From assembly GCF_902652985.1 (NCBI RefSeq), contig NC_047015.1:45818001-45882000 (forward strand): DNA of 64,000 bases, given 5' to 3'. The first letter of the stretch is position 1, and every line of letters begins with the position of its first letter. This DNA comes from Pecten maximus. Lineage: Eukaryota. The notes under the pieces are model-generated. The model saw nothing but the letters and a program-made list of their open reading frames with translations. It had not been told where the DNA came from and ran no database searches. Both the position numbers and the translations under genes were made by a program. Shown one piece after another: positions 982 to 38,584 of this stretch.

Positions 982-1373
982 TAGTTTATAAAACTACATC
1001 CTTGAAAACATACTCTAGCTGGGAAATATGAATTAATTCTCTCCACGGTGATCGGTCGATGCTTATTGTAACAATTCGTTATTGTCAGTAGTTAAAGGTA
1101 GACAACTCCCGTAACTGCTCGTAATTTCCAAGCAAAGAAGATTCTACTTAAAACACAAGGTGGGGTTTCGACTTTATGCATACACAATGTTTACTTATTA
1201 ATATATATATATATATATATAAACCTATTAATCCACATAGATAAGGGTTACCCCTCCCTTCATTTAACTTTGTCCCCTCCTAGGTATCAATATATTAGTT
1301 TCCTTATCATTGACTAGTCGCATAGTTAATTTAGTTCCAGAAGTTGACCGTAACCTGAATGTGATATTTGTAT

Positions 1374-1505
1374 CCTCGGTGGCCTAGTGGTTAAGGTGTC
1401 CCGACACATTATCACTAGCCCTCCACCTCTGGGTTGCGACTTCGAAACCTACGTGGGGCAGTTGCCAGGTACTGACCGTAGGCCGGTTGTTTTTCTCCGG
1501 GTACT
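1374..1505 (+). mobile_element. tRNA-derived SINE 5' half (family A), truncated at the hammerhead array
   Basis: A-box-like TGGCCTAGTGG (1380-1390), B-box-like acTTCGAAACC (~1439-1449), then ggcagttgccaggtactgacc...tttctccgggtact. Homologous to the copy at 53540-53737 (-). Confidence 0.8.
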
Positions 1506-2253
1506 CACCGACGAGTTCTAGAAGGACGAAACAGCTGCATGATGTCCCTAACATCACCGACGAGTCCTAGAAGGACGAAACAGCTGTATGATGTCCCTAA
1601 CATCACCGACGAGTCCTAGAAGGACGAAACAGCTCGATTGTGTTCCTAACATCACCGACGAGTCCTAAAAGGACGAAACAGCTGTATGATGTCCCTAACA
1701 TCACCGACGAGTCTTCGACGGACGAAACAGCTGTATGATGTCCCTAATATCACCGACAAGTCCAAGAAGGAAAAAACAGTTGCATGATGTCCCTAACATC
1801 ACCGACGAGTCCTAAAAGGACGAAACAGCTCGATGGTGTTCCTAACATCACCGATGAGTCCTAGAAGGACGAAACAGCTGTATGATGTCCCTAATATCAC
1901 CGACAAGTCCAAGAAGGAAAAAACAGTTGCATGATGTCCCTAACATCACCGACGAGTCCTAAAAGGACGAAACAGCTCGATGGTGTTCCTAACATCACCG
2001 ATGAGTCCTAGAAGGACGAAACAGCTGCATTATGTCCCTAACATCACCAACGAGTCCTAGACGGACGAAAAAGCTGGGTGGTGTTCCTAACATCACCGAC
2101 GAGTCCTAGAAGGACGAAACAGTTGTATGATGTCCCTAATATCACCGACGAGTTCTAGAAGGACGAAAAAGCTTTATTATGTCCCTAGCATCACCGACGG
2201 GTCCAAGAAGGAAAAAACAGCTGGGTGGTGTTCCTAATATCACCGACGGGTCC
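1506..2253 (+). ncRNA. Tandem array of 15 (plus 1 partial) minimal type-I hammerhead ribozyme motifs, 49-bp period
   Basis: Unit: ACATCA-CCGAYGA-GTCC-TAGAA-GGAC-GAA-ACAGCTGT-A-TGATGT-CCCTA. Helix I ACAUCA/UGAUGU; core C3-(U4>C)-G5A6N7G8A9; helix II GUCC/GGAC; GAAA; palindromic helix III ACAG/CUGU; GUA cleavage triplet. Units start at 1506, 1555, 1604 ... 2241. Confidence 0.8.
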
Positions 2254-5200
2254 TCCCCTGTATGCATATTTGATATTCGGGTGGCGACTCTCCCCTGTAT
2301 GTATATTTGATATTTGATATTGGTGTGGCGACCCTCCCCTGTATGTATATTTGATAGTGGTGTGGCGACCCTCCCCTGTATGTATATTTGATATTGGTGT
2401 GGCGACCCTCCCCTGTATGTATATTTGTTATTCGTGTGGCGACCCTCCCCTGTGTGTATATTTGATATTCGTGTGGCGACCCTCCCCTGTATGTATATTT
2501 GATATTCGTGTGACGACTCTCCCCTGTATGTATATTTGATATTCGTGTGGCGACCATCCCCTGTGTGTATATTTGATATCCGTATGGCGACCCTCCCCTG
2601 TATGTATATTTGATATTCGTGTGGCGACCCTCCCCTGTGTGTATATTTGATATTTGTGTGGCGACCATCCCCTGTGTGTATATTTGATATTCGTGTGACG
2701 ACCCTCCCCTGTATGTATATTTGTTATTCGTGTGGCGACCCTCCCCTGTGTGTATATTTGATATTCGTGTGGCGACCCTCCCCTGTATGTATATTTGATA
2801 TTCGTGTGGCGACCCTCCCCTGTATGTATATTTGATATTAGTTGTGGCGACCCTCCCCTGTATGTATATTTGATATTAGTTGTGGCGACCCTCCCCTGTA
2901 TGTATATTTGATATTCGTGTGGCGACCCTCCCCTGTGTGTATATTTGATATTCGTGTGGCGACACTCCCCTGTATGTATATTTGATATTCGTGTGGCGAC
3001 CCTCCCCTGTATGTATATTTGATATTGGTGTGGCGACTCTCCCCTGTGTGTATATTTGATATTCGTGTGGCGACCCTCCCCTGTATGTATATTTGATATT
3101 CGTGTGGCGACCCTCCCCTGTATGTATATTTGATATTCGTATGGCGACCCTCCCCTGTATGTATATTTGATATTCGTGTGGCGACCCTCCCCTGTGTGTA
3201 TATTTGATATTTGTGTGGCGACCCTCCCCTGTATGTATATTTGATATTCGTGTGGCGACCCTCCCCTGTGTGTATATTTGATATTCGTGTGGCGACCCTC
3301 CCCTGTATGTATATTTGATATTCGTGTGGCGACCCTCCCCTGTGTGTATATTTGATATTCGTGTGGCGACCATCCCCTGTGTGTATATTTGATATTCGTT
3401 GTGGCGACCCTCCCCTGTATGTATATTTGATATTCGTGTGGCGACCCTCCCCTGTATGTATATTTGTATATTTGATATTCGTGTGGCGACCCTCCCCTGT
3501 ATGTATATTTGTATATTTGATATTCGTGTGGCGACCCTCCCCTGTATGTATATTTGTATATTTGATATTCGTGTGGCGACCCTCCCCTGTATGTATATTT
3601 GTATATTTGATATTCGTGTGGCGACCCTCCCTTGTATGTATATTTGATATCCGTGTGGTGACTCTCCCCTGTATGTATATTTGATATCCGTGTGGCGACC
3701 CTCCCCTGTATGTATATTTGATATTTGATATCCATGTGGCGACCCTCCCCTGTATGTATATTTGATATTCGTGTGGCGACCCTCCCCTGTATGTATATTT
3801 GATATTCGTGTGGCGACCCTCCCCTGTATGTATATTTGATATTCGTGTGGCGACTCTCCCCTGTATGTATATTTGATATTCGTGTGACGACCCTCTCCTG
3901 TATGTATATTTGATATTCGTGTGGCGACCCTCCCCTGTATGTATATTTGTTATTCGTGTGGCGACCCTCCCCTGTGTGTACATTTGATATTTGTGTGGCG
4001 ACCATCCCCTGTGTGTATATTTGATATTCGTGTGGCGACCCTCCCCTGTATGTATATTTGTATATTTGATATTCGTGTGGCGACCCTCCCCTGTATGTAT
4101 ATTTGATATCCGTGTGGCGACCCTCCCCTGTATGTATATTTGATATCCGTGTGGCGACCCTCCCCTGTATGTATATTTGATATTCGTGTGGCGACTCTCC
4201 CCTGTGTGTATATTTGATATTCGTGTGACGACCCTCTCCTGTATGTATATTTGATATTCGTGTGACGACCCTCTCCTGTATGTATATTTGATATTCGTGT
4301 GGCGACCCTCCCCTGTATGTATATTTGATATTCGTGTGGCGACCCTCCCCTGTATGTATATTTGATATTCGTGTGGCGACCCTCCCCTGTATGTATATTT
4401 GATATTCGTGTGGCGACCCTCCCCTGTATGTATATTTGATATTCGTGCGGCGACTCTCCCCTGTATGTATATTTGTTATTTGATATCCGTGTGGCGACCC
4501 TCCCCTGTATGTATATTTGATATTCGTGTGGCGACCCTCCCCTGTATGTATATTTGTATATTTGATATTCGTGTGGCGACCCTCCCCTGTATGTATATTT
4601 GATATCCGTGTGGCGACCCTCCCCTGTATGTATATTTGATATCCGTGTGGCGACCCTCCCCTGTATGTATATTTGATATTCGTGTGGCGACTCTCCCCTG
4701 TGTGTATATTTGATATTCGTGTGACGACCCTCTCCTGTATGTATATTTGATATTCGTGTGGCGACCCTCCCCTGTATGTATATTTGATATTCGTGTGGCG
4801 ACCCTCCCCTGTATGTATATTTGATATCCGTGTGGCGACCCTCCCCTGTATGTATATTTGATATCCGTGTGGCGACCCTCCCCTGTATGTATATTTGATA
4901 TTCGTGTGGCGACCCTCCCCTGTGTGTATATTTGATATTCGTGTGACGACCCTCTCCTGTATGTATATTTGATATTCGTGTGGCGACCCTCCCCTGTATG
5001 TATATTTGATATTCGTGTGGCGACCCTCCCCTGTATGTATATTTGATATTCGTGTGGCGACCCTCCCCTGTATGTATATTTGATATTCGTGTGGCGACCC
5101 TCCCCTGTATGTATATTTGATATTCGTGCGGCGACTCTCCCCTGTATGTATATTTGTTATTTGATATCCGTGTGGCGACCCTCCCCTGTATGTATATTTG

Positions 5201-5750
5201 ATATTCGTGTGGCGACCCTCCCCTGTATGTATATTTGTATATTTGATATTCGTGTGGCGACCCTCCCCTGTATGTATATTTGATATCCGTGTGGCGACCC
5301 TCCCCTGTATGTATATTTGATATTCGTGTGGCGACTCTCCCCTGTATGTATATTTGATATTCGTGTGGCGACCCTCCCCTGTATGTATATTTGATATTCG
5401 TGTGACGACCCTCTCCTGTATGTATATTTGATATTCGTGTGGCGACCCTCCCCTGTATGTATATTTGATATTCGTGTGGCGACCCTCCCCTGTATGTATA
5501 TTTGATATTCGTGTGGCGACCCTCCCCTGTATGTATATTTGATATTCGTGTGGCGACCCTCCCCTGTATGTATATTTGATATTCGTGCGGCGACTCTCCC
5601 CTGTATGTATATTTGTTATTTGATATCCGTGTGGCGACCCTCCCCTGTATGTATATTTGATATTCGTGTGGCGACCCTCCCCTGTATGTATATTTGATAT
5701 TCGTGTGGCGACCCTCCCCTGTGTGTATATTTATAATTTGATATTCGTGT
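2254..5750. repeat. 37-bp minisatellite (attcgtgtggcgaccctcccctgtatgtatatttgat), ~90 copies, with a 681-bp higher-order duplication
   Basis: Direct reading. Identical ORF-track peptides at 4399 and 5080 mark the 681-bp duplication. Confidence 0.95.
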
Positions 5751-6269
5751 ATTGATAATGGAACAGCTATCCTCGATGTTTGTGTCCGTTCTGTCATTAT
5801 AACACGATGGTTTAGACGTGTTTGGGAGTTCCATACACCTTTGTTACTTGCGTGCTCGCATGCTGGTGTTAATGAAATGGATTATAAAATGGGCGTATTT
5901 TACTTTATCAAATACTAGAGTCACGATTTTTACTTATTCTAAATTTTAATCATTGACACGTTAAAGAAGATTGCCTGTCTGGAGTACTTGGTGATGTTGA
6001 GTTGACGAAGTGCTGAACTACAGTCAATAAACTATCTGCATTATAAAGATGTTATAATATACCTGTCTATCACTAGTATGTCAACGTTTCTATAAAATCC
6101 CTTCGCGACACATTTTTTTGTTTTTTTTTTTTTTTTTGACACATTTTTTTTTTTTTTTTTTGCACTCAGAGCATAGAGCAAAGACTTTTTTTGCATTAGC
6201 AGACTATAAAATTACAAACTTTATTATACAACGAATTTTCATATCTGCTTAGCTTAAACTTGCTTACAC

Positions 6270-7325: not shown

Positions 7326-9857
7326 TCATTTTTTAGTTGTCTTCGTACTTGTATTTTCGTTCGTACTGTTTGTCTGACTGTTGTTGTGTTTAATATCATT
7401 TCTTGCCTTCCATATTACCCATTTCACAGTGCATATTATTGTGTTTATCAAAAGAGAAAATGTGTTATTTCCTGGATATCCCAGTATTACATTTTCTTCT
7501 TTATCAAGTATTTCGTTAGTATAACCTGGGACAATATCCCTCATTAGGGTCTCCACAGAGTTCAATATATTTCTAGTGTGTGCACATTTAAAGAATAAGT
7601 GTTGTATGTCTTCATTTTCGGTTTTACAGAAATGACATTTTCCATCAGAATTTCCGAATTTTTTTATTTTCATTTCTGTGTATAATATTTTGTGTACACA
7701 TTTCCATTGAAATTCCTTAATCTTTAAGGCTGTCAATATATTAAAACAGTTTTGCCAAATTTCATTCCATGGGAATTGTTTTTTATATATATTCTCCCAT
7801 TTCATTTGTATTGTTGGCTCAATATTACCATTTATTTTCATTATAAGTGTTTTTAATTTTAGTTTCTTATGTACGATATGTTTATTGTGTTTATCGACAA
7901 TATTTAATGTTGTATCTATTTTTGGATACATAATGACATCATGAATGATTTCTTCTTTTAATATTCTTTTATATCTTTGCGGAATAGCAGACTTCAGTCT
8001 TGCTAATTCAGATATACAATTTCTTTTATCTATAAGTCTCCCATATATATCATGGTCATTCTTGAACGTATCTTGCCCTGAATCCCATAAATCCTCTATG
8101 GTGTATATTCCACTCTTTGTGAAGGAACTAAAGAACATAGGTTTTCTGTTGAAATGTATCATAGGATTGCCAAAAAGTTCTTGTTTTATGACTTCGTTTT
8201 TATCAATTAGTGTATTGGTTTTTAATAATTTGGACCATGCTGTTAAGAGATTTCTGTAAAAGTTTGATATATGCGTCAGCTTTAGCGTACTGGTGTCGGA
8301 GCATTTGCATAAGAAATAGTTTAGTTGGTATTTATCATCTAGCGAATGTAGCCAATATTGTCCTATAGCATTCCATGTGGTAGTGTTTGTTTGCATGATT
8401 TTGTATATCAATTTTATTTGTTTGCTCAATGTGAATAGTGTTATATCCATAATATCCATCCCTCCGTTTGATTGTTCTGAGCAGACTACATTTCGCTTAA
8501 CTAATTCTAATTTCCCATTCCATATAAATTTCCAGATAATTGTATTTAATTCTTTCAAATATTTATCAGGTATGCCACGAGCTTCTATTTCATAGCCAAC
8601 CTTAGATATTATTAACGATCTTATAATAACATTTTTTCCGAATAGTGACAGATTTCTTGTTTTCCATACCTGCACACAACTATTGATCTTTTGGATTTTT
8701 TCTTTCCGTAGTTTATCATCATCTATTATGTGTCCATGATATACTCCTAGCGCTTTTATATTTGTTTGTGTCCAACTGATTGCTCTGTATCTGGGAACAT
8801 TTTGTTTCCATCTTCCAAGATAGATACCGGTAGTTTTATTCAAGTTGACCTTCGATCCTGATGCTTTTTCGTATGTACTTAGAACTTTAAGAGATTCTAT
8901 TATTGATTGTTAATCTTTATTGAATAGTTGTGTATCGTCTGCAAACACATTTAATTTAGCTTCAATGTGACCTGGCAGTACTATTCCGTTGATATCTTTA
9001 TTCTTGCGGATGGAGCATGCTAGAGGTTCCGCTTGTATGATGTATAAAATTGGCGCGATCGGGCAACCCTGCCTCGCGGATCTCGATATATTAAAATATT
9101 CCGAGATAAAACCATTTGTTTTTATGCATTTTTTGCATCTACTAATAACATTTGCACCCATCCTCTAAATATTTTTCCGAAATTTAACCGTTCAAGACAT
9201 TTATCTATACCCATCCCCATTCCACCCTATCAAAAGCTTTTTGTTGGTCTAAGAAAATAACTGCTCACTCCTTATTTTCCATATCGGTATATTCAAATAT
9301 GTCTTGTATTAGCCTATTTGCATCCGCAATATTTCTTCCCGGTACAAATCCTTTCTGGTCCGGATGAATAATGCCTGGGAGTATTTTTTTTAATTCTATT
9401 TGCGAAAAATTTCGCTATTATTTTATAGTCAACATTTAAAAGCGTCAGCGGTCTCCAATTTTTTATATCCTCACGCTCTCCGTTTTTGTACAACAATGTT
9501 AAAATACCCTTTGCCTGCGATTCTGCTAACTTATTTGTTCTACATATTTCATTTACAAGTTCTAAAAATTCATTCTTAATGACATACCAATAAATTTGAT
9601 AAAACTCGGCTACAATGCCATCCTCCCCAGGAGACTTGTTCTTTTTTCATATCTTGGATACTTTAAATACTTCCGCCTCACTTAATTAAGTTTCCATATA
9701 TATACTTCATTTGTTATACGCGTTTCCATATTGGATAGTAAAATATGTGCTGCTTCTCTGTCCCACCCTTCGGAGCTAAATAATGTTTTGTAAAATTGCA
9801 CTTGCTCCTGTTGTATGGATTTTATGTCATTTTTATATTCCCCTTCTGAAGTTTTGA
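7326..9857 (-). pseudogene. Disrupted LINE ORF2 (reverse transcriptase, zf-RVT)
   Basis: Four ORF fragments in different frames, each carrying non-LTR ORF2 motifs. Confidence 0.85.
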
Positions 9858-10069
9858 TTCGCGACACATTTTAGTACTCTTTTATAAGATAAAATGAAAC
9901 ACAATTCCATAATTTGGAAATGGAAATGTTACATTTTGACAAGCATTAAGATGTTATCGGACGACATAGTAACTTACATGTTACGAGTTAACGGTAGAAC
10001 CCCTAACTGCACAGCAATTGACATGTTCTCACTGCCATATACCTGAAACACGTACCCGGGTCTTGTTTC

Positions 10070-13000
10070 CATTTACCTACAGCATGTGACATGCTCTAAC
10101 TGTCATTTACCTACAACATGTGCCATGCTCTAACTGTCATTTACCTACAGTATGTAACCTGCTCTAGCCGCCATTTATCGCGGCAAGTAACCTGTTCAAG
10201 CTGTCATCTACCTGCAGCAAATGAACTGCTGTAACTACCACTTACATACAACATGTGACCTACTCTAGCTGTCATATACCTGCAGCATGTGACCTACTCT
10301 AACTGCCACCTACCTACAATATGTGACCTACTCTAACTTCCACCTACCAACAGCATGTGACCTGTTCTAGCTGCCATTTACCTACAGCATGTGACCTACT
10401 CTAACTGCCACTTACGTACAGCATGTGACCTACTCTAGCTGTCATTTACCTACAGCATGTGACCTACTCTAACTGCCACTTACCTACAGCATGTGACCTG
10501 TTCTAGCTGTCATTTACCTGCAGCATTTGACCTACTCTAACTGCCACTTACCTACAGTATGTGACCTACTCTAGCTGTCATTTACCTGCAGCATGTGACC
10601 TGTTCTAGCTGCCATTTACCTACAGCATGTGACATGTTTTAGCTGTCATTTACCTGCAGCATGTGACCTACTTTAGCTGTCATTTACCTGCAGCATGTGA
10701 CCTACTCTAGCTGTCATTTACCTGCAGCATGTGACCTACTCCAGCTGCCATTTACCTGCAGCATGTGACCTACTCCAGCTGCCATTTACCTACAGCATGT
10801 GACCTACTCCAGCTGCCATTTACCTACAGCATGTGACCTACTCTAACTGCCACTTTTATGCATGTGACCTACTCCAGCTGCCACTTACCTACAGCATGTG
10901 ACCTACTCCAGCTGCCACTTACCCGCGGCATGTAACCTACTCCAGCTGCCATTTACCCGCGGCATGTGACCTACTCCAGCTGCCATTTACCTACAGCATG
11001 TGACCTGTTCTAGCTGCCACTTACCTACAGCATGTGACCTACTCTAGCTGCCACTTACCTACAGCATGTGACCTACTCCAGCTGCCATTTACCTGCAACA
11101 TGTGACCTACTCCAGCTGCCACTTACCTACAACATGTGACCTACTCCAGCTGCCATTTACCTGCAGCATGTGACCTACTCCAGCTGCCTTTTACCTACAG
11201 CATGTGACCTACTCTAACTGCCACCTACCTACAGCATGTGATCTACTCCAGTTGCCATTTACCTGCAGCATGTGACCTACTCCAGCTGCCTTTTACCTAC
11301 AGCATGTGACCTACTCTAACTGCCACTTACCTACAGCATGTGACCTGTTCTAGCTGTCATTTACCTGCAGCATTTGACCTACTCTAACTGCCACTTACCT
11401 ACAGCATGTGACCTACTCTAGCTGTCATTTACCTGCAGCATGTGACCTACTCTAGCTGTCATTTACCTACAGCATGTGACCTACTCCAGCTGCCACTTAC
11501 CTACAGCATGTGACCTGTTCTAGCTGCCACTTACCTACAGCATGTGACCTACTCCAGCTGCCACTTATCCGCGGCATGTGACATACTCCAGCTGCCACTT
11601 ACCTGCAACATGTGACCTACTCCAGCTGCCATTTACCTGCAACATGTGACCTACTCCAGCTGCCATTTACCTGCAGCATGTGACCTACTCCAGCTGCCAT
11701 TTACCTGCAACATGTGACCTAATCCAGCTGCCACTTACCTACAGCATGTGACCTACTCCAGCTGCCTTTTACCTACAGCATGTGACCTACTCTAGCTGTC
11801 ATTTACCTGCAACATGTGACCTACTCCAGCTGCCTTTTACCTACAGCATGTGACATGCTCTAACTGTCATTTACCTACAACATGTGCCATGCTCTAACTG
11901 TCATTTACCTACAGTATGTAACCTGCTCTAGCCGCCATTTATCGCGGCAAGTAACCTGTTCAAGCTGTCATCTACCTGCAGCAAATGAACTGCTGTAACT
12001 ACCACTTACATACAACATGTGACCTACTCTAGCTGTCATATACCTGCAGCATGTGACCTACTCTAACTGCCACCTACCTACAATATGTGACCTACTCTAA
12101 CTTCCACCTACCAACAGCATGTGACCTGTTCTAGCTGCCATTTACCTACAGCATGTGACCTACTCTAACTGCCACTTACGTACAGCATGTGACCTACTCT
12201 AGCTGTCATTTACCTACAGCATGTGACCTACTCTAACTGCCACTTACCTACAGCATGTGACCTGTTCTAGCTGTCATTTACCTGCAGCATTTGACCTACT
12301 CTAACTGCCACTTACCTACAGCATGTGACCTACTCTAGCTGTCATTTACCTGCAGCATGTGACCTGTTCTAGCTGCCATTTACCTACAGCATGTGACATG
12401 TTTTAGCTGTCATTTACCTGCAGCATGTGACCTACTTTAGCTGTCATTTACCTGCAGCATGTGACCTACTCTAGCTGTCATTTACTTGCAGCATGTGACC
12501 TACTCCAGCTGCCATTTACCTGCAGCATGTGACCTACTCCAGCTGCCATTTACCTACAGCATGTGACCTACTCCAGCTGCCATTTACCTACAGCATGTGA
12601 CCTACTCTAACTGCCACTTTTATGCATGTGACCTACTCCAGCTGCCACTTACCTACAGCATGTGACCTACTCCAGCTGCCACTTACCCGCGGCATGTAAC
12701 CTACTCCAGCTGCCATTTACCCGCGGCATGTGACCTACTCCAGCTGCCATTTACCTACAGCATGTGACCTGTTCTAGCTGCCACTTACCTACAGCATGTG
12801 ACCTACTCTAGCTGCCACTTACCTACAACATGTGACCTACTCCAGCTGCCATTTACCTGCAACATGTGACCTACTCCAGCTGCCACTTACCTACAACATG
12901 TGACCTACTCCAGCTGCCATTTACCTGCAGCATGTGACCTACTCCAGCTGCCTTTTACCTACAGCATGTGACCTACTCTAACTGCCACCTACCTACAGCA

Positions 13001-14350
13001 TGTGATCTACTCCAGTTGCCATTTACCTGCAGCATGTGACCTACTCCAGCTGCCTTTTACCTACAGCATGTGACCTACTCTAACTGCCACTTACCTACAG
13101 CATGTGACCTGTTCTAGCTGTCATTTACCTGCAGCATTTGACCTACTCTAACTGCCACTTACCTACAGCATGTGACCTACTCTAGCTGTCATTTACCTGC
13201 AGCATGTGACCTACTCTAGCTGTCATTTACCTACAGCATGTGACCTACTCCAGCTGCCACTTACCTACAGCATGTGACCTGTTCTAGCTGCCACTTACCT
13301 ACAGCATGTGACCTACTCCAGCTGCCACTTATCCGCGGCATGTGACATACTCCAGCTGCCACTTACCTGCAACATGTGACCTACTCCAGCTGCCATTTAC
13401 CTGCAACATGTGACCTACTCCAGCTGCCATTTACCTGCAGCATGTGACCTACTCCAGCTGCCATTTACCTGCAACATGTGACCTAATCCAGCTGCCACTT
13501 ACCTACAGCATGTGACCTACTCCAGCTGCCTTTTACCTACAGCATGTGACCTACTCTAGCTGTCATTTACCTGCAACATGTGACCTACTCCAGCTGCCTT
13601 TTACCTACAGCATGTGACCTACTCTAACTACCACTTACCTACAACATGTGCCTACTCTAGCTGTCATTTACCTGCAGCATGTGACCTACTCCAGCTGCCA
13701 CTTACCTGCAGCATGTGACCTACTCCAGCTGCCACTTACCTGCAGCATGTGACCTACTCTAACTGCCACTTACCTACAGCATGTGACCTACTCTAGCTGT
13801 CATTTACCTGCAGCATGTGACCTACTCTAGCTGTCATTTACCTTCAGCATGTGACCTACTCTAGCTGTCATTTACCTGCAGCATGTGACTTACTCTAACT
13901 GCCACTTACCTACAGCATATGACCTACTCCAGCTGCCACTTACCCGCGGCATGTAACCTACTCCAGCTGCCATTTACCCGCGGCATGTGACCTACTCCAG
14001 CTGCCATTTACCTACAGCATGTGACCTACTCTAACTGTCATTTACCTACAGCATGTGACCTACTCCAGCTGCCATTTACCTACAGCATATGACCTACTCT
14101 AACTACCACTTACCAGCGGCATGTGACCTGCTCCAGCTGCCATTTACCTACAGCATGTGACCTACTCCAGCTGCCATTTACCCGCGGCATGTGACCTATT
14201 CCAGCTGCCACTTACCCGCGGCATGTGACCTATTCCAGCTGCCATTTACCTACAGCATGTGACCTACTCCAGCTGCCATTTACCTACAGCATGTGACCTA
14301 CTCCAGCTGCCACTTACCCGCAGTAAGTAACCTGATAATATACCTACAGC
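10070..14350. repeat. 31-bp minisatellite (consensus tttacctacagcatgtgacctactccagctgcca-like), ~135 copies, with a 1764-bp internal duplication
   Basis: Direct reading. The rare-variant pattern at 10081 recurs at 11845, and 11821 recurs at 13585. Confidence 0.93.
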
Positions 14351-15580: not shown

Positions 15581-15624
15581 TAGGTGTCTCGCATAGCAAC
15601 AGGAAAATTGAAACGAGGTATCTC

Positions 15625-17395
15625 ACACACTAACAGGTAAACACCGGTGAACACACACTAACAGGTAAACACCAGGTGTACACACACTAACAGGTAAACA
15701 CCAGGTGTACACACACTAACAGGTAAACACCAGGTGAACACACACTAACAGGTGAACACACACTAACAGGTAAACACCAGGTGAACACACACTAACAGGT
15801 AAACACCAGGTGTACACACTCTAACAGGTAAACACCAGGTGTACACACACTAACAGGTAAACACCAGGTGAACACACACTAACAGGTAAACACCAGGTGA
15901 ACACACACTAACAGGTAAACACCGGTGAGCACACCCTAACAGGTAAACACCGGTGCACACACACTAACAGGTAAACACCAGGTGTACACACACTAACAGG
16001 TAAACACCAGGTGTACACACACTAACAGGTAAACACCAGGTGTACACACACTAACAGGTAAACACCAGGTGAACACACACTAACAGGTAAACACCGGTGA
16101 GCACACACTAACAGGTAAACGCAGGTGAATACACACTAACAGGTAAACACCAGAGGTGAACACACACTAACAGGTGAACACACACTAACAGGTAAACACC
16201 AGGTGAACACACACTAACAGGTAAACACCGGTGAACACACACTAACAGGTAAACGCAGGTGAATACACACTAACAGGTAAACACCAGAGGTGAACACACA
16301 CTAACAGGTGAACACACACTAACAGGTAAACACCAGGTGAACACACACTAACAGGTGAACACACACTAACAGGTAAACACCAGGTGAACACACACTAACA
16401 GGTTAACACCGGTGAACACACACTAACAGGTAAACACCGGTGAACACACACTAGCAGGTGAACACCAGGTTAACACACACTAACAGGTAAACACCGGTGT
16501 ACACACACTAACAGGTAAACACAGGTGTACACACACTAACAGGTAAACACAGGTGTACACACACTAACAGGTGAACAGGTAAACACCGGCGAACACACAC
16601 TAACAGGTAAACACCGGTGAACACACACTAACAGGTAAACACACACTAACAGGTAAACACCGGTGAACACCAGGTGAACACACACTGACAGGTGAACACA
16701 CACTAACAGGTAAACACAGGTGAACACCAGGTGAGCACACACTAACAGGTGAACAAACACTAACAGGTTAACGCCGGTGAACACCAAGTGTACACACACT
16801 AACAGGTAAACACCGGTGAACACCAGGTGAACACACACTGACAGGTGAACACTGGTGAACACCAGGTGTATACACACTGAAAGGTGAACACCTGTGAACA
16901 CCAGGTGTACATACACGAACAAGTGAACACACACTAACAGGTAAACGCCGGTGAACACCAGGTGTACACACACTAACAGGTGAACACACACTAACAGGTA
17001 AACGCCGGTGAACACCAGGTGTACACACACTAACAGGTGAACACACACTAACAGGTAAACGCCGGTGAACACCAAGTGTACACACACTTACAGGTGAACA
17101 CACACTAACAGGTAAACGCCGGTGAACACCAAGTGTACACACACTAACAGGTGAACACCAGGTGAACACACACTAACAGGTAAACGCCGGTGAACACATA
17201 CTAACAGGTAAACGCCGGTGAACACCAGGTGAACACACATTAGGCCTAACAGGTGAACACCGGTGAACACACACTAACAGGTAAACGCCGGTGAACACCA
17301 GGTGTACACACACCAGGCCTAACAGGTGAACACCGGTGAACACACACTAACAGGTAAACGCCGGTGAACACCAGGTGTACACACACAAACAGGTA
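15625..17395. repeat. Modular ~16-28-bp minisatellite (acacacactaacaggtaaacaccaggtg)
   Basis: Direct reading; the V/C/H/L-rich minus-strand ORFs are repeat artefacts. Confidence 0.95.
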
Positions 17396-18971
17396 AGCTG
17401 GTTTCCTTTATCGGATTGTACGTTACGGTAAATGTGCTAGTAAGTGAAATGCTGACTGGTAGCAGCAAGGACAAGCTGTTGCATGATATCCACTGCAATG
17501 AGATAGAAGGATAATTACGTGTGACATTGATTTTATGATTATCCCGCACAGGGTCACAGTGAGGCCCATGCACAGTCTTACACTGGACGGCGGGGCCGCT
17601 GGTGTGTCAACACCGACCGGTGCATAAATTACAGTATTTAGGAGAAAAGTGGGTTTGTGTGATTGTGCGCCTGCAAAACGTCGGCCTCAATTCTAGTCAT
17701 TGTCCGTCTCGGCGTCATCGATCGAACGTCAATACAGACAAATCGCAGTCATGGCGTCAACATGGTGGACGAAGGTAGGTGGCAAGCGTTTTTGTTTCCG
17801 TCATGCATCTCTCAATATTTATTGTCAATACAGACTACACATCATATCGTAGAATATGGTCGATCTGCTTTCCTACAATGGACTCGTATTTAATCATAAA
17901 CAGACACAATATGGAGACATTTGCATTACATGTGGACAGCTTATCATCAGGGGCTGTCATATAGTAATGCGCGACTGTGTATGGAAAAGATTATCAGATA
18001 ACCGTAGCGGAAGAGCAAGACTACATCTCTTGTTGATGGCTAGCGAATGTCTTTATTCTATTGCTGATATCTACTAAGATTCATATCGGCATAGATTGGC
18101 GGCTTCGCCTTTTTCCAACGAGCCATTATTTTTCGTCTTTTGGTTGTAATGTGATCGCGTATGGAATGTGTTAACATGTAAGATATGTTGATGCATTTTG
18201 ACCTGTTGCTTATTTATGCTAATTCGTCTTCATCTCGTAGATTAACATTGAGCATGCGTATACGAAATCAAACGCGCTCGTGATCGAATTCTTCTGAAGA
18301 TTCCAGGGACAAGTAGGCCTACTTCCGACTGGATTGTTTCTGCATGTTTTCGTGGCCGACTTGTTATTAGAAGCCTACAGTGACAAAAGCATGGCACATA
18401 TCGACCAGTATACATTATAGACTTAACGTAATCATTTCTTTTAGTATCATTATATTTGATTTTGCTGTTGTTGTTTTGGCTTTTTTATAGTTTTTTTTTC
18501 AGTATGACTTACAAGATTTAAATGATAGACTTTTTCCGTTAGATTATAACATTTTTAATGCTTAATGGAACGAAAATGTATTGCAAAGAGGTGACATTCC
18601 CTCCTGAATAAATGAAAGAATTGCTTCCTTTTCTAATGCTTATCGAGAATTTAAATTATAATGACACAAACTGTCTAGACTGCACTACAACTCGCCTCGC
18701 GCAGTGATATAGTTTGAGATGATTTTGTTCTTTACTTATACATAGGTAGGACAAAAACATGAAACACGTGTGGCAATGAGTTTAAGATGTATACCACAAA
18801 TCCAAGTATATTTTACAGTAACATATCCTTATTGCTCAATAATTCAAACAATCAAACATAGCATTGGACACACGTGTAAATAGAAAATCATTCAGTAGTC
18901 TATTTTTAATCTGATTGGCTGATGAAATGAAATTTGGTATTTTCATCTGAAGTCCATGTATAACACTTGAT

Positions 18972-19159: not shown

Positions 19160-21390
19160 AGGTTACACCACGTGTAATATATATACCATGTACACCACGT
19201 GTTGTAATACCGTCTCGTGTACCATGTACAAATCGTGTTGTTACCATGTACAAATCGTGTTGGTAATACCGCCTCATGTATCATCAACACCACGTGTTAT
19301 AATACCGTCTCGTGTACCATGTACAAATCGTGTTAGCAATACCGCCTCATGTACCATGTACACCACGTGTTATAATACCGTCTCATGTACCATGTACAAA
19401 TAACGTTAGCAATACCGCCTCATGTACCATGTACAAATCGTGTTGTTACCATGTACAAATCGTGTTGGTAATACCGCCTCATGTATCATCAACACCACGT
19501 GTTATAATACCGCCTCATGTATCATGTACACCACGTGTTCAATACCGTCTCATGTACCATGTACAAATCGTGTTAGCAATACCGCCTCATGTACCATGTA
19601 CACCACGTGTTCAATACCGTCTCGTGTACCATGTACAACTCGTGTTAGCAATACCGCCTCATGTACCATGTACACCACGTGTTGGTAATACCGCCTCATG
19701 TATCATCAATACCACGTGTTATAATACCGTCTCATGTACCATGTACAAAACGTGTTAGCTATACCGTCTCGTGTACCATGTACAAATAGTGTTAGCAATA
19801 CCGTCTCGTGTACCATGTACACCACGTGTTGGTAATACCGTTTCATGTACCATGTACAAATGTACAAATAGTGTTAGCAATACCGTCTCGTGTACCATGT
19901 ACACCACGTGTTATAATACCGTCTCGTGTACCATGTACAAATAGTGTTAGCAATACCGTCTCGTGTACCATGTACACCACGTGTTGGTAATACCGTTTCA
20001 TGTACCATGTAAAAATAGTGTTAGCAATACCGTCTCATGTACCATGTACAAAACGTGTTAGCTATACCGTCTCGTGTACCATGTACAAATAGTGTTAGCA
20101 ATACCGTCTCGTGTACCATGTACACCACGTGTTATGATACCGTCTCGTGTACCATGTACAAATAGTGTTAGCAATACCGTCTCGTGTACCATGTACACCA
20201 CGTGTTATGATACCGTCTCGTGTACCATGTACAAATAGTGTTAGCAATACCGTCTCGTGTACCATGTACACCACGTGTTGATAATACCGTCTCGTGTATC
20301 ATGTACAAATAGTGTTAGCAATACCGTCTCGTGTACCATGTACACCACGTGTTGATAATACCGTCTCGTGTACCGTGTACAAATCGTGTAAGCAATACCG
20401 TCTCGTGTAGCATGTACACCACGTGTTGATAATACCAACTCGTGTACCATGTACAAATAGTGTTAGCAATACCGTCTCATGTGCCATAAACATCACGTGT
20501 CGGTAATACCGTCTCGTGTACCATGTACAAATAGTGTTAGCAATACCGTCTCATGTGCCATAAACATCACGTGTCGGTAATACCGTCTAATATGCCACGA
20601 ACACCACGTGTTGGTAATACCCCCTCATGTAACATGTACACCACGTGTCGGTAATACCCCCTCATGTACCATGTACACCATGTGTTGGTAATACCCCCTC
20701 ATGTACCATGCACACCACGTGTTGGTAATACCCCCTCATGTACCATGTACACCATGTGTTGGTAATACCCCCTCATGTACCATGCACACCACGTGTTGGT
20801 AATACCCCCTCATGCACCATGTACACCATGTGTTGGTAATACCCCCTCATGTACCATGCACACCACGTGTTGGTAATACCCCCTCATGTACCACGAACAC
20901 CACGTGTTGGTAATACCCCCTCATGCACCATGTACACCATGTGTTGGTAATACCCCCTCATGTACTACGAACACCACGTGTTGGTAATACCCCCTCATGT
21001 ACCATGTACACCATGTGTTGGTAATACCCCCTCATGTAACATGTACACCACGTGTCGGTAATACCCCCTCATGCACCATGTACACCATGTGTTGGTAATA
21101 CCCCCTCATGTAACATGTACACCACGTGTCGGTAATACCCCCTCATGCACCATGTACACCATGTGTTGGTAATACCCCCTCATGTAACATGTACACCACG
21201 TGTTGGTAATACCCCCTCATGCACCATGTACACCATGTGTTGGTAATACCCCCTCATGCACCATGTACACCATGTGTTGGTAATACCCCCTCATGTACCA
21301 TGCACACCACGTGTTGGTAATACCCCCTCATGTAACATGTACACCACGTGTCGGTAATACCCCCTCATGCACCATGTACACCATGTGCTT
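19160..21390. repeat. 37-bp minisatellite (aataccgtctcgtgtaccatgtacaccacgtgttggt) with an alternating-dimer middle block and a homogenised aataccccctc right-hand block
   Basis: Direct reading. Confidence 0.95.
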
Positions 21391-22399
21391 GTAATGACGT
21401 TGGTAAATACAATGTACGTCAGCATGTCTGAGATTTAAATCTTTTTGAAATGGTTCACTCATCAAGGTGGATACAACTCCAGCCTCTTAATCCAAAACCG
21501 GGTGAACAGTATTCAACCAACTTTCCTCTCAGTCCCGTAGAATGAAAATATACATTGACCTTTGTACCACTGCAGCACTTACGTTATATTCAAACTGAAA
21601 TTTACTCGGTCATCTGGTGTTCATTCCGGTAAGTACATGTACCTCACAAAACTTGAATTTCCCTGGCTTAAACATCAAATGAACAGTTTTGTTAATTTAG
21701 TGAGATTAACTACAACGTTCTGACAATGAACCATGACAAATCCTAGAATTTGAATGAATAGGATAATGAAACATTGTATAACAATATCAAGCATACAGCG
21801 TCAGTAAGAATTATATTTAATTAAGCGATATTCGATATTTTATTGGATACTCAGACAGTTGATATTTACAGTTTTACAACCGAATTCGTGTTGTGCTTGT
21901 ATTTTTGTTACTGTACGTCATGTCACCAGAGCCGTTTATTGACATATTCGATGGTATAGGATTCGGCGTGTACGATGTATACATATCGGGAAGAGCCTGA
22001 AGCCTAGCACACAAATCTCTATCGTTCATTAGCGTGGAGATTTCATACTCTCTCACCGAAAATCAATATCACCTTTCGCAGATTCTCGACAGATTTATTG
22101 GTAATGCTGGGTGTACCGTTGACAGCCACCTGAGGTGACCATGGCCACCTCGAGAGTATCTCGTGTCGAGTGTACTGATGACGTCATGGAATCGCTGTTA
22201 ACGACCTTTCGGGCGCCAAATGCCCATTACTGTATGTTGGAGACCGGTGGGCAATGTTGATAAATATCTTTTATTGTCCTCAGAAGATTGGACAGAATTG
22301 TGCACAGAATGAACCGCCGTTTATGTTTTTTCCCCCAACTAATGATTGTATTTATATGTAACTAGACACAATACCGACTGTCAATTAAGCAACGTAGTC

Positions 22400-23640
22400 T
22401 CGTTAATACAGGACCCGTGACCTTATTAATACAGGACCCGTGACCTCGTTAATACAGGACCCGTGACCTTATTAATACAGGACCCGTGACCTTATTAATA
22501 CAGGACCCGTGACTCGGTTAATACAGGACCCGTGACCTTATTAATACAGGACCCGTGACCTCGTTAATACAGGACCCGTGACCTTATTAATACAGGACCC
22601 GTGAACTTATTAATACAGGACCCGTGACTCGGTTAATACAGGACCCGTGACCTTATTAATACAGGTCCCGTGACCTCGTTAATACATGACCCATGACTTG
22701 GTTAATACATGACCCGTGACTTGGTTAATACAGGACCCGTGACCTTATTAATACAGGACCCGTGACCTTATTAATACAGGACCCGTGACCTCGTCAATAC
22801 AGGACCCGTGACCTCGTTAATACAAGACCCGTGACTTGGTTAATACATGACCCGTGACTTGGTTAATACATGACCCGTGACTTGGTTAATACAGGACCCG
22901 TGACCTTATTAATACAGGACCCGTGACCTTATTAATACAGGACCCGTGACCTCGTCAATACAGGACCCGTGACCTCCTTAATACATGACCCATGACTTGG
23001 TTAATACATGACCCGTGACTTGGTTAATACAGGACCCGTGACCTTATTAATACAGGACCCGTGACCTCGTCAATACAAGACCCGTGACCTCGTTAATACA
23101 AGACCCGTGACTTGGTTAATACACGACCCGTGACTTGGTTAATACAGGACCCGTGACTTGGTTAGTACACGCCCCATGACTTGGTTAATACAGGACCCGT
23201 GACTTGGTTAATACACGACCCTTAACCTCGTTAATACACGACCCTTAACCTCGTTAATACACGACCCGTGACTTCGTTAATACAAGACCCGTGACTTGGC
23301 TAATACAGGACCCGTGACTTGGTTAATACAGGACTCATGACTTGGCTAATACAGGACCCGTGACTTGGTTAATACAGGACCCTTGACTTGGTTAATACAG
23401 GACTCATGACTTGGTTAATACAGGACCCGTGACCTCGTCAATACAGGACTCGTGACTTGGTTAATACAGGACTCGTGACTTGGTTAATACAGGACCCGTG
23501 ACTTGGTTAGTACACGACCCGTGACTTGGTTAATACTGATCCCGTGACTTGGTTAAAACAGGACTCGTGACTTTGTTAATACAGGACCCGTGACTTGCTT
23601 AATACAGGACCCGTGACTTGGTTAATACAGGACCCGTGAA
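22400..23640. repeat. 23-bp minisatellite (ttaatacaggacccgtgacttgg), ~53 copies
   Basis: Direct reading. Confidence 0.95.
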
Positions 23641-33389: not shown

Positions 33390-36300
33390 GGGGATATGTC
33401 AGTTGTGTGGGTATGTCAGTTGTGGGGATATGTCAGTTGTGTTGGTATGTCAGTTGTGGGGATATGTCAGTTGTGTTGGTATGTCAGCTTTTCTGTGGGC
33501 AGGTCTATAGTGTGGACAGGTCTATAGTGTGGACAGGTCTATAGTGTGGATAGGTCTATAGTGTGGACAGGTCTATAGTGTGTACAGGTCTATAGTGTGG
33601 ACAGGTCTATAGTGTGGACAGGTCTATAGTGTGGACAGGTCTATAGTGTGTACAGGTCTATAGTGTGGACAGGTCTATAGTGTGGACAGGTCTATAATGT
33701 GGACAGGTCTATAGTTGTGTGGACAAGTCTATAGTGTGGACAGGTCTATAGTGTGGACAGGTCTATAGTGTGGATAGTTCTATAGTGTGGACAGGTCTAT
33801 AGTGTGGATAGTTCTATAGTTGTGTCGACAGGTATATAGTGTGTACAGGTCTATAGTGTGTACAGGTCTATAGTGTGGACAGGTCTATAGTGTGGACAGG
33901 TCTATAGTGTGGACAGGTCTATAATGTGGACAGGTCTATAGTTGTGTGGACAGGTCTATAGTGTGGACAGGTATATAGTGTGGACAGGTTTATAGTGTGG
34001 ACAGGTATATAGTGTGTACAGGTCTATAGTGTGGACAGGTCTATAGTGTGGACAGGTTTATAGTGTGTACAGGTATATAGTGTGGACAGGTCTATAGTGT
34101 GGACAGGTCTATAGTGTGGACAGGTCTATAGTGTGGACAGGTCTATAGTGTGGACAGGACTATAGTGTGGACAGGTCTATAGTTGTGTCGACAGGTCTAT
34201 AGTGTGGACAGGTCTATAGTGTGGACAGGTCTATAGTGTGGACAGGTCTATAGTGTGGACAGGTCTATAGTGTGGACAGGTCTATAGTGTGGACAGGTCT
34301 ATAGTGTGGACAGGTCTATAGTGTGGACAGGTCTATAGTGTGGACAGGTCTATAGTGTGGACAGGTCTATAGTGTGGACAGGTCTATAGTGTGGACAGAT
34401 CTATAGTGTGGACAGGTCTATAGTGTGGACAGGTCTATAGTGTGGACAAGTCTATAGTGTGGACAGGTCTATAGTGTGGACAAGTCTATAGTGTGGACAG
34501 GTCTATAGTTGTGTGGACAGATCTATAGTGTGGACAGGTCTATAGTTGTGTGGACAGGTCTATAGTTGTGTGGACAGGTCTATAGTTGTGTGGACAGGTC
34601 TATAGTGTGGACAGGTCTATAGTGTGGACAGGTCTATAGTGTGGACAGGTCTATAGTGTGGACAGGTCTATAGTGTGGGAAGGTCTAGTGTGGACAGGTC
34701 TATAGTGTGGACAGGTCTATAGTGTGGACAGGTCTATAGTATGGACAGGTCTATAGTGTGGACAGGTCTATAGTGTGGACAGGTCTATAGTGTGGACAGG
34801 TCTATAGTATGGACAGGTCTATAGTGTGGACAGGTCTATAGTGTGGACATGTCTATAGTGTGGACAGGTCTATAGTGTGGACATGTCTATAGTGTGGACA
34901 GGTCTATAGTGTGGACAGGTCTATAGTGTGGACAGGTCTATAGTGTGGACAGGTCTATAGTTGTGTCGACAGGTCTATAGTTGTGTCGACAGGTCTATAG
35001 TTGTGTCGACAGGTCTATAGTGTGGACAGGTCTATAGTGTGGACAGGTCTATAGTGTGGACAGGTCTATAGTGTGGACAGGTCTATAGTGTGGACAGGTC
35101 TATAGTTGTGTCGACAGGTCTATAGTTGTGTCGATAGGTCTATAATGTGGACAGGTCTATAGTGTGGACAGGTCTATAGTTGTGTGGACAGGTATATAGT
35201 GTGGACAGGTCTAGAGTGTGGACAGGTCTATAGTGTGGACAGGTCTATAGTGTGGACAGGTCTATAGTTGTGTGGACAGGTCTAGAGTGTGGACAGGTCT
35301 ATAGTGTGGACAGGTCTATAGTTGTGTCGACAGGTCTATAGTGTGGACAGGTATATAGTTGTGTCGACAGGTCTATAGTTGTGTGGACAGATCTATAGTG
35401 TGGACAGGTCTATAGTTGTGTGGACAGGTCTATAGTGTGGACAGGTCTATAGCGTGGACAGGTCTATAGTGTGTACAGGTCTATAGTGTGGACAGGTCTA
35501 TAGTGTGGACAGGTCGATAGTGTGGACAGGTCGATAGTATGGACAGGTCTATAGTGTGGACAGGTCTATAGTGTGGACAGGTCTATAGTGTGGACAGGTC
35601 TATAGTGTGGACAGGTCTATAGTATGGACAGGTCTATAGTATGGACAGGTCTATAGTGTGGACAAGTCTATAGTGTGGACAGGTCTACAGTGTGGACAAG
35701 TCTATAGTGTGGACAGGTCTATAGTGTGGACAGGTCTACAGTGTGGACAGGTCTATAGTGTGTACAGGTCTATAGTGTGTACAGGTCTATAGTGTGTACA
35801 GGTCTATAGTGTGGACAGGTCTATAGTTGTATGGACAGGTCTATAGTTGGGTGGACAGGTCTGTAGTTGTGTGGACAGGTTTATAGTTGTGTGGACAGGT
35901 CTATAGTTGTATGGACAGGTTTATAGTGTGGACAGATCTATAGTTGTGTGGACAGATCTATAGTTGTATGGACAGGTTTATAGTTGTATGGACAGGTTTA
36001 TAGTTGTATGGGCAGATCTATAGTTGTGTGGACAGACACGTAGTTGTGTGGACAGATATATATAGTTGTATGGACAGGTTTATAGTTGTATGGACAGGTT
36101 TATAGTTGTATGGACAGGTCTATAGTTGTGTGGTCAGGTCTATAGTGTGGACAGGTCTATAGTGTGGACAGGTCTATAGTTGTGTGGTCAGGTCTATAGT
36201 TGTGTGGACAGGTCGATAGTTGTGTGGACAGGTATATAGGTATGTAGGTATGTAGGTATGTAGGCAGGTCTATAGGTATGTAGGCAGGTCTATAGGTATG

Positions 36301-37625: not shown

Positions 37626-38584
37626 CCGTGTCGCTAACCCAGTGTGACAATGTCCTATCAGGGTATGGTGACTTCTCCACTCGCTACACTGAGAGACGAT
37701 ACGCCGACAGAAGCGTAATTTTGATCAAAATAGATTTTTCGAATGTAACGTTAGGCATATTAAATTGGGAGGACGGGCGATGGTTGTGTTGTGAAATGTC
37801 TTTTACTGAACATTTTATTACTTCAGAATATGTTGTATTTAGTTATACAGCAACCACAACGAGAATTGTGTACAAACCACGACTCGTATCTACTTCTCTA
37901 AATGTACCCATTCCTTGATTGGTACACAAGATAAAAGCTTCGATTCCATTCGAGATGGATCAAAGTTAACGATTTCAACAAAACTTTGATTTCTAACATC
38001 GTAAAATATGTCATATTTTGTTTTCTGTATAAAACTAATGTAGAAGTATAGGAAACTGAAATAAAAAGGAAATATTTTCAACCATTGAAAAATAGTTAAT
38101 TAAACTCACCTGTCACTCTGTCAGACTAGAACGCGTGGTTTCCGAACTGGGCGATTTCCGACACTCGTCTACGCAGAACTAACACTCTGTTCAATATTGC
38201 AATATACAGTACAGGAAAATCTACCGTTGGATTTGTGGATTTCTCCCAAAACCATACCGGCACAACTAGCTTATCTTTGGTGATGATGGGTTAAATGTTA
38301 AGGTTAATATTGTGGTTTAAACGTGACCAGACAGATACCAATGACATTTTAACTGTTACTGAGGTTTAATTGGCTGTATAGCTTCTTGTTGTTTCAATTG
38401 TGATGATATGGTACGGTGAAAATATCGCCATTTTAGATTGACGAAATTATGTTTTTCGCGGATATTTCCAAACATATTTTTGTTATGCGATAAACAATAT
38501 CTTAAATTAGTTGCCATTTCATTTGAAATTCATGAAACTCGTTACGAAATTAATGTTCATTCAAACTCGCCAGAGGCTTGATGT

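What the first reader, a model, noticed from the sequence alone, without database searches (positions are those of the whole stretch)
1506..2253. Head-to-tail array of ~15 minimal hammerhead ribozymes forming a 49-bp minisatellite
Seen: the unit contains all type-I hammerhead elements in order: helix I 5' arm ACATCA, core CCGAYGA, helix II GTCC-TAGAA-GGAC, GAA, loopless palindromic helix III ACAGCTGT, cleavage base A, helix I 3' arm TGATGT. The motif takes ~44 of the 49 nt. Many variants keep pairing through G.U wobbles (TGGTGT, AATATCA, GTCT/GGAC, ACAGTTGT) or fall in loop II. Units at 1555, 1653, 1702, 1849 and 2094 look intact (GUA); others have GCA or core damage. Established: minimal type-I hammerheads with a palindromic helix III occur in Penelope-like element repeats and satellites/retrozymes, and are thought to cleave as dimers, which a tandem array favours. 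Unusual here: the repeat is little more than the ribozyme (known retrozyme monomers are longer) and all units carry U4>C. Inference: a transcript could self-process into 49-nt-multiple RNAs, possibly circularising, i.e. an ultra-minimal retrozyme-like unit.
Basis: partly seen in the sequence, partly recalled or inferred. Interest (0 to 1): 0.92.

Follow-up and report, generated by a model that had tools for sequence, protein, structure and literature searches.

The report
Minisatellite of tandem hammerhead ribozymes
Fifteen head-to-tail 49-base copies of a self-cleaving hammerhead RNA motif form this array, which is a mutated and probably crippled member of a scallop-genome-wide family of such arrays, the most compact ribozyme-bearing repeat I could find described.

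Summary
Window 1505-2254 is a 49-bp x 15.3 indel-free array whose unit is a complete type-I hammerhead. Rfam Hammerhead_1 scores one unit above its gathering score and four just below. All units carry C at core position U4.

It is not a one-off. The genome, whose statistics equal the published Pecten maximus assembly, holds about 3,900 near-consensus units in dispersed 49-bp arrays. Nearly all have the canonical CUGA core: 237 exact canonical 41-mers against 8 with U4C. This array is therefore a rare mutated lineage, and only 6 of its 15 units have U4C as their sole core defect.

Consensus multimers fold into nested double hammerheads. Adjacent units share an 8-bp helix III and excise exactly 49 nt.

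The 49-mer is not the mobile unit. Many sister arrays (about 10 of 24 sampled keep the tail) sit between a conserved leader and a tail with a fixed 3' end. Older relatives carry a single hammerhead, giving a roughly 350-430-nt retrozyme or Penelope-style non-autonomous retroelement.

Copies decay neutrally. RNA-library contigs hold canonical units, but cleavage is unproven.

Verdict: a real feature and a new compact variant of a known kind. This copy is likely a fossil. The scan flagged the same family in eight other windows of this genome.

The parts
1505..2254 (+). 49-bp minisatellite of 15.3 units, each a complete type-I hammerhead motif with C at core position U4. Contains a 147-bp higher-order repeat.
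   Evidence: TRF; unit table; Rfam.
1551..1594 (+). Hammerhead unit with U4C as its only core change. All helices intact, GUA cleavage triplet.
   Evidence: RF00163 32.7 bits. This is one of only 8 exact U4C 41-mers in the genome.
1649..1692 (+). Best-scoring hammerhead unit, with U4C as its only core change.
   Evidence: RF00163 35.2 bits, above the gathering score of 34.
1698..1741 (+). Hammerhead unit with U4C only. Helix II and loop II are altered but still paired.
   Evidence: RF00163 27.4 bits.
1845..1888 (+). Hammerhead unit with U4C only. The variable position N7 is U.
   Evidence: RF00163 30.7 bits.
2090..2133 (+). Hammerhead unit with U4C only. Helix III keeps pairing through a G.U pair.
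   Evidence: RF00163 30.0 bits.
2139..2182 (+). Hammerhead unit with U4C only in the core. Helix III carries a doubly compensated palindrome (AAAGCUUU). Helix I has 5 of 6 pairs.
   Evidence: RF00163 16.7 bits.
1374..1505 (+). Left boundary: a 3'-truncated copy of an ordinary tRNA-derived SINE. It is not part of the hammerhead element.
   Evidence: About 40 scored copies at 92-97% identity continue with a different SINE body and an (AAACA)n tail, never with hammerhead units.
2252..5732 (+). Right boundary: an unrelated 37-bp minisatellite of 91.5 copies that abuts the last, partial hammerhead unit. The family's 3' tail is absent.
   Evidence: TRF; no tail match at 2200-2400 or 5700-6100.
1277..1322 (+). 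Possible remnant of the family's leader end plus a degenerate first hammerhead half-unit, lying upstream of the SINE fragment. This is tentative.
   Evidence: Motif match at 1277 and visual alignment. BLAST of the element consensus finds no significant leader or tail in the window.

Best explanation
The array is a locally expanded, mutated copy of a scallop-specific family in which a canonical metazoan type-I hammerhead, plus a 5-nt spacer, has been amplified into 49-bp minisatellites.

These arrays sit inside a short non-autonomous retroelement with the layout leader - hammerhead(s) - tail.

In a transcript, neighbouring units swap helix-I arms and pair their palindromic helix-III strands. 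The result is nested double hammerheads that present every GUA site, so canonical arrays should cut themselves into 49-nt (and multiple) RNAs with 5'-OH and 2',3'-cyclic phosphate ends.

What is shown and what is inferred:
- Shown: motif, family, architecture and folding.
- Inferred: that cleavage occurs.

This particular array descends from a founder unit that already carried U4C, and it then grew by DNA-level duplication, as the 147-bp higher-order repeat indicates. Nine of its 15 units have further core lesions. It has lost the family's leader and tail and lies between a SINE fragment and another minisatellite. It is therefore most likely a weakly active or dead fossil.
For: - Motif and array.
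- Family size: 173 listed matches from 1,107 candidates on many chromosomes; 3,917 near-consensus units against 0 for the control; Hammerhead_1 up to 42.1 bits with 21 hits over the cut-off.
- Canonical core dominates.
- Double-hammerhead minimum-free-energy folds. All 49 nt are used (8+1+17+7+13+3). The real sequence folds with z=-3.3 against -1.9 for the antisense strand.
- Conserved tail and leader in sister arrays.
- Older relatives, 70-77% identical in the leader, carry a single hammerhead.
- Fixed 3' end and variable 5' start. Of 40 tail+connector hits, about 22 stop at tail position ~71, about 11 run on into the connector, and 4 are connector-only. The upstream tail copy has z=10.6 in L072 and z=12 in L074.
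- Penelope-like elements form partial tandems and prime reverse transcription internally (PMC8557442; PMC11167929).
- Neutral decay of copies.
- Contigs from two runs recorded as RNA-Seq, and two guessed to be RNA, hold family units. They read T where the window has C at 1558, in over 90% of depth. There is no depth on the neighbouring unique flank or the 37-bp array.
Against: - No cleavage, RNA ends or circles could be observed. Only assembled contigs were available, and DNA carry-over of a multi-thousand-copy repeat cannot be excluded.
- No covariation supports the helices.
- No autonomous partner was identified. Nothing beyond the short flanks is shared among three 10-kb loci. Ten GIY-YIG loci show no similarity to the unit, leader or tail.
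- The retroelement classification rests on end patterns only. Target-site duplications were not determined.
- U4C is tolerated in vivo in a viroid (PMC3088659), so the six otherwise intact units may retain some activity.
Confidence: 0.8

Rival explanations
1. Active ultra-minimal retrozyme. The 49-nt RNA excised by two neighbouring hammerheads is itself the propagating unit. It is circularised by a host RNA ligase and copied by rolling-circle reverse transcription, which is what creates the arrays. The window's array would be a functioning example.
For: - The unit length equals the cleavage-to-cleavage distance, and every nucleotide belongs to the ribozyme.
- Arrays always contain whole units between leader and tail.
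- Solo-hammerhead ancestors exist.
- Animal retrozymes are proposed to move via circular RNAs (PMC7229834).
Against: - This array is uniform for U4C and contains a 147-bp higher-order repeat. Both are signatures of DNA-level duplication that does not depend on catalysis.
- Arrays travel with a leader and tail, so the mobile unit is larger.
- Core positions are not protected in copies.
- No RNA evidence for 49-nt species exists.
Confidence: 0.1
2. Host-exapted processing element. Arrays lying in introns or near genes are retained because self-cleavage or their strong nested structure regulates host transcripts, or seeds small RNAs.
For: - Family units occur in RNA-library contigs.
- Other first-stage notes place arrays in introns on both strands (unchecked).
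- One sister locus holds head-to-head inverted arrays that would form long double-stranded RNA (L010).
Against: - Copies decay neutrally, with no excess of intact cores.
- This array sits among other minisatellites and a SINE fragment. The nearest long ORF downstream is the retrotransposon-like one at 7326-8843; the region upstream of the array was not examined for genes.
- No orthologous conservation could be tested.
Confidence: 0.06
3. Chance resemblance. This is an ordinary minisatellite whose unit merely looks like a hammerhead.
For: - Only one unit in the window passes Rfam's gathering score, and all units break the U4 rule.
Against: - Sister arrays match the covariance model at 41-42 bits with a fully canonical core.
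- 3,917 genome matches against 0 for the control pattern.
- Every nucleotide of the unit maps to a hammerhead element.
Confidence: 0.01

Closest known systems
Metazoan non-LTR retrozymes (Cervera & de la Pena 2020, PMC7229834)
   Same: Non-coding tandem repeats carrying canonical type-I hammerheads with a 6-bp helix I, a 4-bp helix II and a short palindromic helix III. They occur in molluscs, co-occur with Penelope-like elements, and have dispersed multi-copy loci. The ancestral solo-hammerhead element here (~350-430 nt) falls in the size range of mussel retrozymes (350-390 bp).
   Different: Reported repeat units are 150-450 bp with one ribozyme each. Here the repeated unit is the 49-nt ribozyme itself, amplified inside the element. 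GC content is 47% against a reported value below 45%. No circular RNA has been shown here.
Minimal hammerheads in Penelope-like element pseudo-LTRs (Cervera & de la Pena 2014, PMC4209133; Lunse et al. 2017, known to me only through the review PMC6765202)
   Same: A type-I motif with a palindromic stem III that is expected to act as a dimer when copies lie in tandem. Insertions show a fixed 3' end, variable 5' truncation and partial tandems.
   Different: Penelope-element min-hammerheads have a long helix II (6-8 bp), a short helix I (2-5 bp), and lie about 3 kb apart flanking an RT/GIY-YIG ORF. Here the helices are canonical, units are 49 nt apart, and no ORF is associated.
Double-hammerhead satellites and viroids: newt satellite 2 and avocado sunblotch viroid (Forster et al. 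1988, as cited in PMC4209133), Schistosoma Sm-alpha, cave-cricket satellite
   Same: Weak monomeric helix III. Activity comes through pairing of two units into an extended helix III. The sequences are transcribed satellite-like repeats.
   Different: Those repeat units are about 250-500 nt with long non-ribozyme spacers. Here consecutive ribozymes are separated by 5 nt, which become loop I of the neighbouring fold.

Membership tests
Hammerhead ribozyme, type I (Rfam RF00163) | Covariance-model score at or above the gathering score (34 bits) | tested here: met
   Unit 1649-1692 scores 35.2 bits; four other units score 27-33 bits. Sister arrays score 41-42 bits.
Hammerhead ribozyme, type I (Rfam RF00163) | Invariant core: C3 U4 G5 A6 N7 G8 A9, G12 A13 A14, A15.1-U16.1, and H17 not G | tested here: not met
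   All 15 window units have C at U4, and 9 have further core changes. In the family the feature is met: 237 exact canonical 41-mers, and 158 of 423 sampled units have all 11 core nucleotides intact.
Hammerhead ribozyme, type I (Rfam RF00163) | Three helices around the core; helix III stabilised as a dimer when it is short and palindromic | tested here: met
   Helix I has 6 of 6 pairs and helix II 4 of 4 in most units. Dimers give an 8-bp helix III.
Hammerhead ribozyme, type I (Rfam RF00163) | Site-specific self-cleavage | not testable with these tools
   Only assembled contigs were available, so no RNA ends could be seen.
Metazoan non-LTR retrozyme | Tandem repeats of 150-450 bp, each with one type-I hammerhead | tested here: not met
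   The period is 49 bp. The carrier element with one hammerhead is ~350-430 nt, but it was seen as solo or partial-tandem copies and not as long tandems.
Metazoan non-LTR retrozyme | Non-coding, dispersed, multi-copy, without LTRs | tested here: met
   The only long ORFs overlapping the array boundary or lying in the neighbouring 37-bp minisatellite are repeat-derived artefacts, and none lies within the hammerhead array.
Metazoan non-LTR retrozyme | [quoted passage not shown] | tested here: inconclusive
   Family units are present in RNA-seq-derived contigs, mostly with canonical U4. Neither ends nor circles can be read from contigs.
Penelope-like element pseudo-LTR hammerhead | Located in repeats flanking an RT plus GIY-YIG ORF | tested here: not met
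   Nothing beyond the short flanks is conserved among three 10-kb loci. Ten of at least 150 GIY-YIG loci show no similarity. The sampling is limited.
Penelope-like element pseudo-LTR hammerhead | Insertion signature: fixed internal 3' end, 5' truncation, partial tandems | tested here: met
   compared with PMC8557442 and PMC11167929.

The most novel reading that the evidence does not exclude
The 49-nt unit is the smallest natural self-excising and circularisable ribozyme module. Array transcripts would chop themselves into 49-nt RNAs that are ligated into circles and copied by a Penelope-type reverse transcriptase running round the circle. The arrays would then be rolling-circle cDNA products, making this a retrozyme reduced to nothing but its ribozyme.
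Probability: 0.1. Interest if true: 0.9.

Novelty: new variant of a known kind. Interest (0 to 1): 0.58.

Why it matters
Hammerheads in animal genomes are known from repeats of a few hundred bases, where most of the unit is spacer. Here a whole family has shrunk the repeat to the ribozyme alone: thousands of units on many, probably all, chromosomes of a scallop.

This gives a natural test bed for several questions:
- How double hammerheads fold and cleave when packed head to tail.
- Whether very small (49/98-nt) ribozyme RNAs or circles exist in animals.
- How a satellite is born from a functional RNA motif inside a retroelement.

It also bears on annotation. Such arrays are easily masked as anonymous minisatellites. 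Arrays uniform for a crippling mutation, like this one, show that their growth does not need catalysis.

Tried and rejected
1. The upstream tRNA-like sequence as the head of a hammerhead SINE (as in Schistosoma Sm-alpha). Rejected: other copies of that SINE never continue into hammerhead units.
2. My idea that the leader begins with a diverged copy of the tail. Pairwise scores were no better than shuffles, so I dropped it. The separate observation of a true tail copy upstream of some elements is significant.
3. Covariation in helices I-III, both within units and between neighbours. There were only a handful of double changes and no signal.
4. Extra conservation of the core. None was found.
5. 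A link to Penelope-like elements via ten GIY-YIG loci. No similarity and no hammerhead there.
6. Leader or tail in the window itself. No significant match; only weak remnants at 1277-1322 and 1340-1369 (z=1.7).
7. Exact unit in metagenome and viral contig collections. No hits.
8. Literature. I found no report of a roughly 50-nt hammerhead repeat or of scallop hammerheads. Lunse et al. 2017 is not held.
9. Larger flanks for 20 loci, and further loci.
10. ARAGORN finds no tRNA in the window.

Full report
**What is there.** TRF finds a 49-bp repeat at 1505-2254: 15.3 copies, 84% matches, no indels, score 1059. Cut in register, the 15 units show a 147-bp higher-order repeat, with units 1747/1796/1845 repeated as 1894/1943/1992.

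At curated thresholds, Rfam reports a single family in the whole 64-kb window: Hammerhead_1 at 1649-1692, 35.2 bits against a gathering score of 34. A permissive scan adds four units at 27-33 bits and two at 15-17 bits. It also gives type-III hammerhead hits that straddle unit junctions.

Every unit has C at core position U4. Six units have that as their only core change. Nine also lose U16.1, G8, G12, G5 or A9.

**The genome and the family.** The assembly behind the window has 918,306,378 bases in 3,983 contigs. These are exactly the figures published for Pecten maximus (PMC7191990), so I take it to be the king scallop.

A 197-nt piece of the array finds 173 listed matches from 1,107 first-look candidates on most chromosomes, at 80-92% identity and always as 49-bp arrays. 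The Rfam model finds 21 hits above its cut-off among only 72 scored candidates, the best at 41-42 bits. A 37-nt pattern covering the core, helix II, helix III and the 3' arm occurs 3,917 times within two mismatches. The reversed control occurs 0 times.

In 423 units from 24 arrays, U4 is T in 79% and C in 15%. Exact 41-mers number 237 with the canonical core and 8 with U4C, one of them in this window.

Eight other first-stage notes of this scan describe the same 49-nt hammerhead minisatellite elsewhere in this genome. I treat them as agreeing leads only.

**How the RNA would fold.** All 49 nt are accounted for by the ribozyme:

| Element | nt |
|---|---|
| Helix-III strand | 8 |
| Cleavage nucleotide | 1 |
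| Helix-I arm - 5-nt spacer - helix-I arm | 17 |
| Core | 7 |
| Helix II hairpin | 13 |
| GAA | 3 |

A single unit cannot form the loopless helix III. In two or more units the minimum-free-energy structure changes. The 3' arm of one unit pairs with the 5' arm of the next, making a hairpin closed by the spacer. The two palindromic strands pair into one 8-bp helix III, and the outer arms close the whole.

This is the classical double hammerhead, nested along the array. It presents each GUA site and releases exactly 49 nt. The inner junction is formally a type-III hammerhead, which explains the Rfam type-III hits: 23.7 bits here and 30-35 bits in a canonical array.

The real segment 1551-1746 folds the same way, with z=-3.3 against shuffles. 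The antisense strand gives z=-1.9.

That metazoan type-I hammerheads with short palindromic helix III act as dimers is established (PMC4209133; PMC3088659). U4C is reported to lower activity considerably in vitro while still being tolerated in a viroid in vivo (PMC3088659).

**What carries the arrays.** The sequence just upstream (1374-1505) is a 3'-truncated copy of an ordinary tRNA-derived SINE. Its other copies never continue into hammerheads. Downstream, an unrelated 37-bp minisatellite begins inside the last unit.

About 10 of the 24 sampled sister arrays are followed by a conserved tail of about 75-85 nt that ends at a fixed motif (...TGTACAATCC). Several are preceded by a conserved leader. 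Nothing else is shared among three 10-kb loci.

Searching with the leader finds older relatives, 70-77% identical. In these a ~225-nt leader is followed by a single hammerhead and then the tail. The array therefore appears to be a later internal amplification of the ribozyme plus the last 5 nt of the leader.

Some copies start inside an upstream tail copy followed by a ~70-nt connector (z=10.6 and z=12). A genome search with tail plus connector gave 40 hits:
- about 22 stop at the tail end,
- about 11 run on into the connector,
- 4 start in the connector.

A fixed 3' end, variable 5' truncation and partial tandems are the insertion signature described for Penelope-like elements (PMC8557442). 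That signature is explained by internal initiation of reverse transcription (PMC11167929). A 2026 preprint argues that animal retrozymes are non-autonomous Penelope derivatives.

I could not identify the autonomous partner. The genome has at least 150 GIY-YIG matches, but ten sampled loci show no similarity to the unit, leader or tail. The window's own array has no significant leader or tail.

**Selection and growth.** Substitutions per site are 0.082 in the 11 invariant core positions, 0.104 in loops and 0.079 in stems. The core-minus-loop difference has a 95% interval of -0.055 to +0.010. Units with an intact core number 158, against 168 +/- 9 expected if the same mutations fell at random. 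Compensatory double changes are rare.

Copies therefore decay neutrally, as transposon copies do. The ribozyme is visible in the consensus, which is the same in solo-type and array-type elements apart from the first base.

This array is uniform for U4C and contains a higher-order repeat. That shows it grew by DNA-level duplication after the mutation, without needing catalysis.

**RNA evidence.** Only assembled contigs of public runs were available. Two runs recorded as RNA-Seq and two guessed to be RNA hold family units. At 1558 they read T, the canonical U4, in over 90% of depth. There is no depth over the unique flank 1100-1350 or the adjacent 37-bp array, while the SINE is far deeper.

This suggests that canonical sister copies are transcribed. 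It cannot exclude DNA carry-over of a multi-thousand-copy repeat, and it says nothing about ends, strand or circles.

**Verdict.** The feature is real and of ribozyme origin. It belongs with metazoan type-I hammerhead repeats (retrozymes, and Penelope-associated repeats by insertion style). It differs in that the repeat unit is the ribozyme alone: 49 nt against the 150-450 nt reported (PMC7229834).

I found no description of such arrays or of scallop hammerheads in the searchable literature. This is an absence in a partial library, not proof of novelty.

The window's copy is a rare U4C lineage, largely decayed and stripped of its flanks. It is probably a fossil. Whether canonical arrays really process themselves into 49-nt RNAs or circles is the open and testable question.

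Noticed in passing
window 1374-1505 and 925-985: There are two pieces of one tRNA-derived SINE family: a 3'-truncated head next to the array, and a separate 3' end with an (AAACA)n-like tail. Full copies are about 215 bp with target-site duplications. The family is by far the deepest feature in the RNA-library contigs.
   Followed up: partly
window 2252-5732, 10069-14318, 15624-17396, 19242-21395, 22402-23639, 33494-37626, 46014-46922 and others: The window is unusually rich in unrelated minisatellites with periods of 17-74 bp and up to about 220 copies. By my rough sum of the TRF rows they cover about a third of the 64 kb.
   Followed up: no
window 7326-9161, minus strand: There are long ORFs (505 aa plus an adjacent 83 aa) whose sequence looks like the C-terminal part of a non-LTR retrotransposon protein. 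I did not search them against protein families.
   Followed up: no
L010 (G000 C5:37224513-37227556), 893-1221 and 1227-1604: Two hammerhead arrays lie head to head on opposite strands. A read-through transcript would form a long perfect hairpin.
   Followed up: no
L013 (G000 C15:28066986-28070069), 1429-1663: This is a 40-bp variant of the hammerhead minisatellite: the same core and helix II, with a shortened unit.
   Followed up: no
G000 C6:21852742-21855331 and 21866191-21866427: A large array holds dozens of units identical to the canonical 41-mer. It is probably among the youngest arrays and is the best template for a cleavage assay.
   Followed up: no
window 2139-2187: This unit's helix-III palindrome changed on both sides (C to A and G to T) and is still a perfect palindrome. 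It is a rare compensated change in an otherwise neutrally decaying array.
   Followed up: partly
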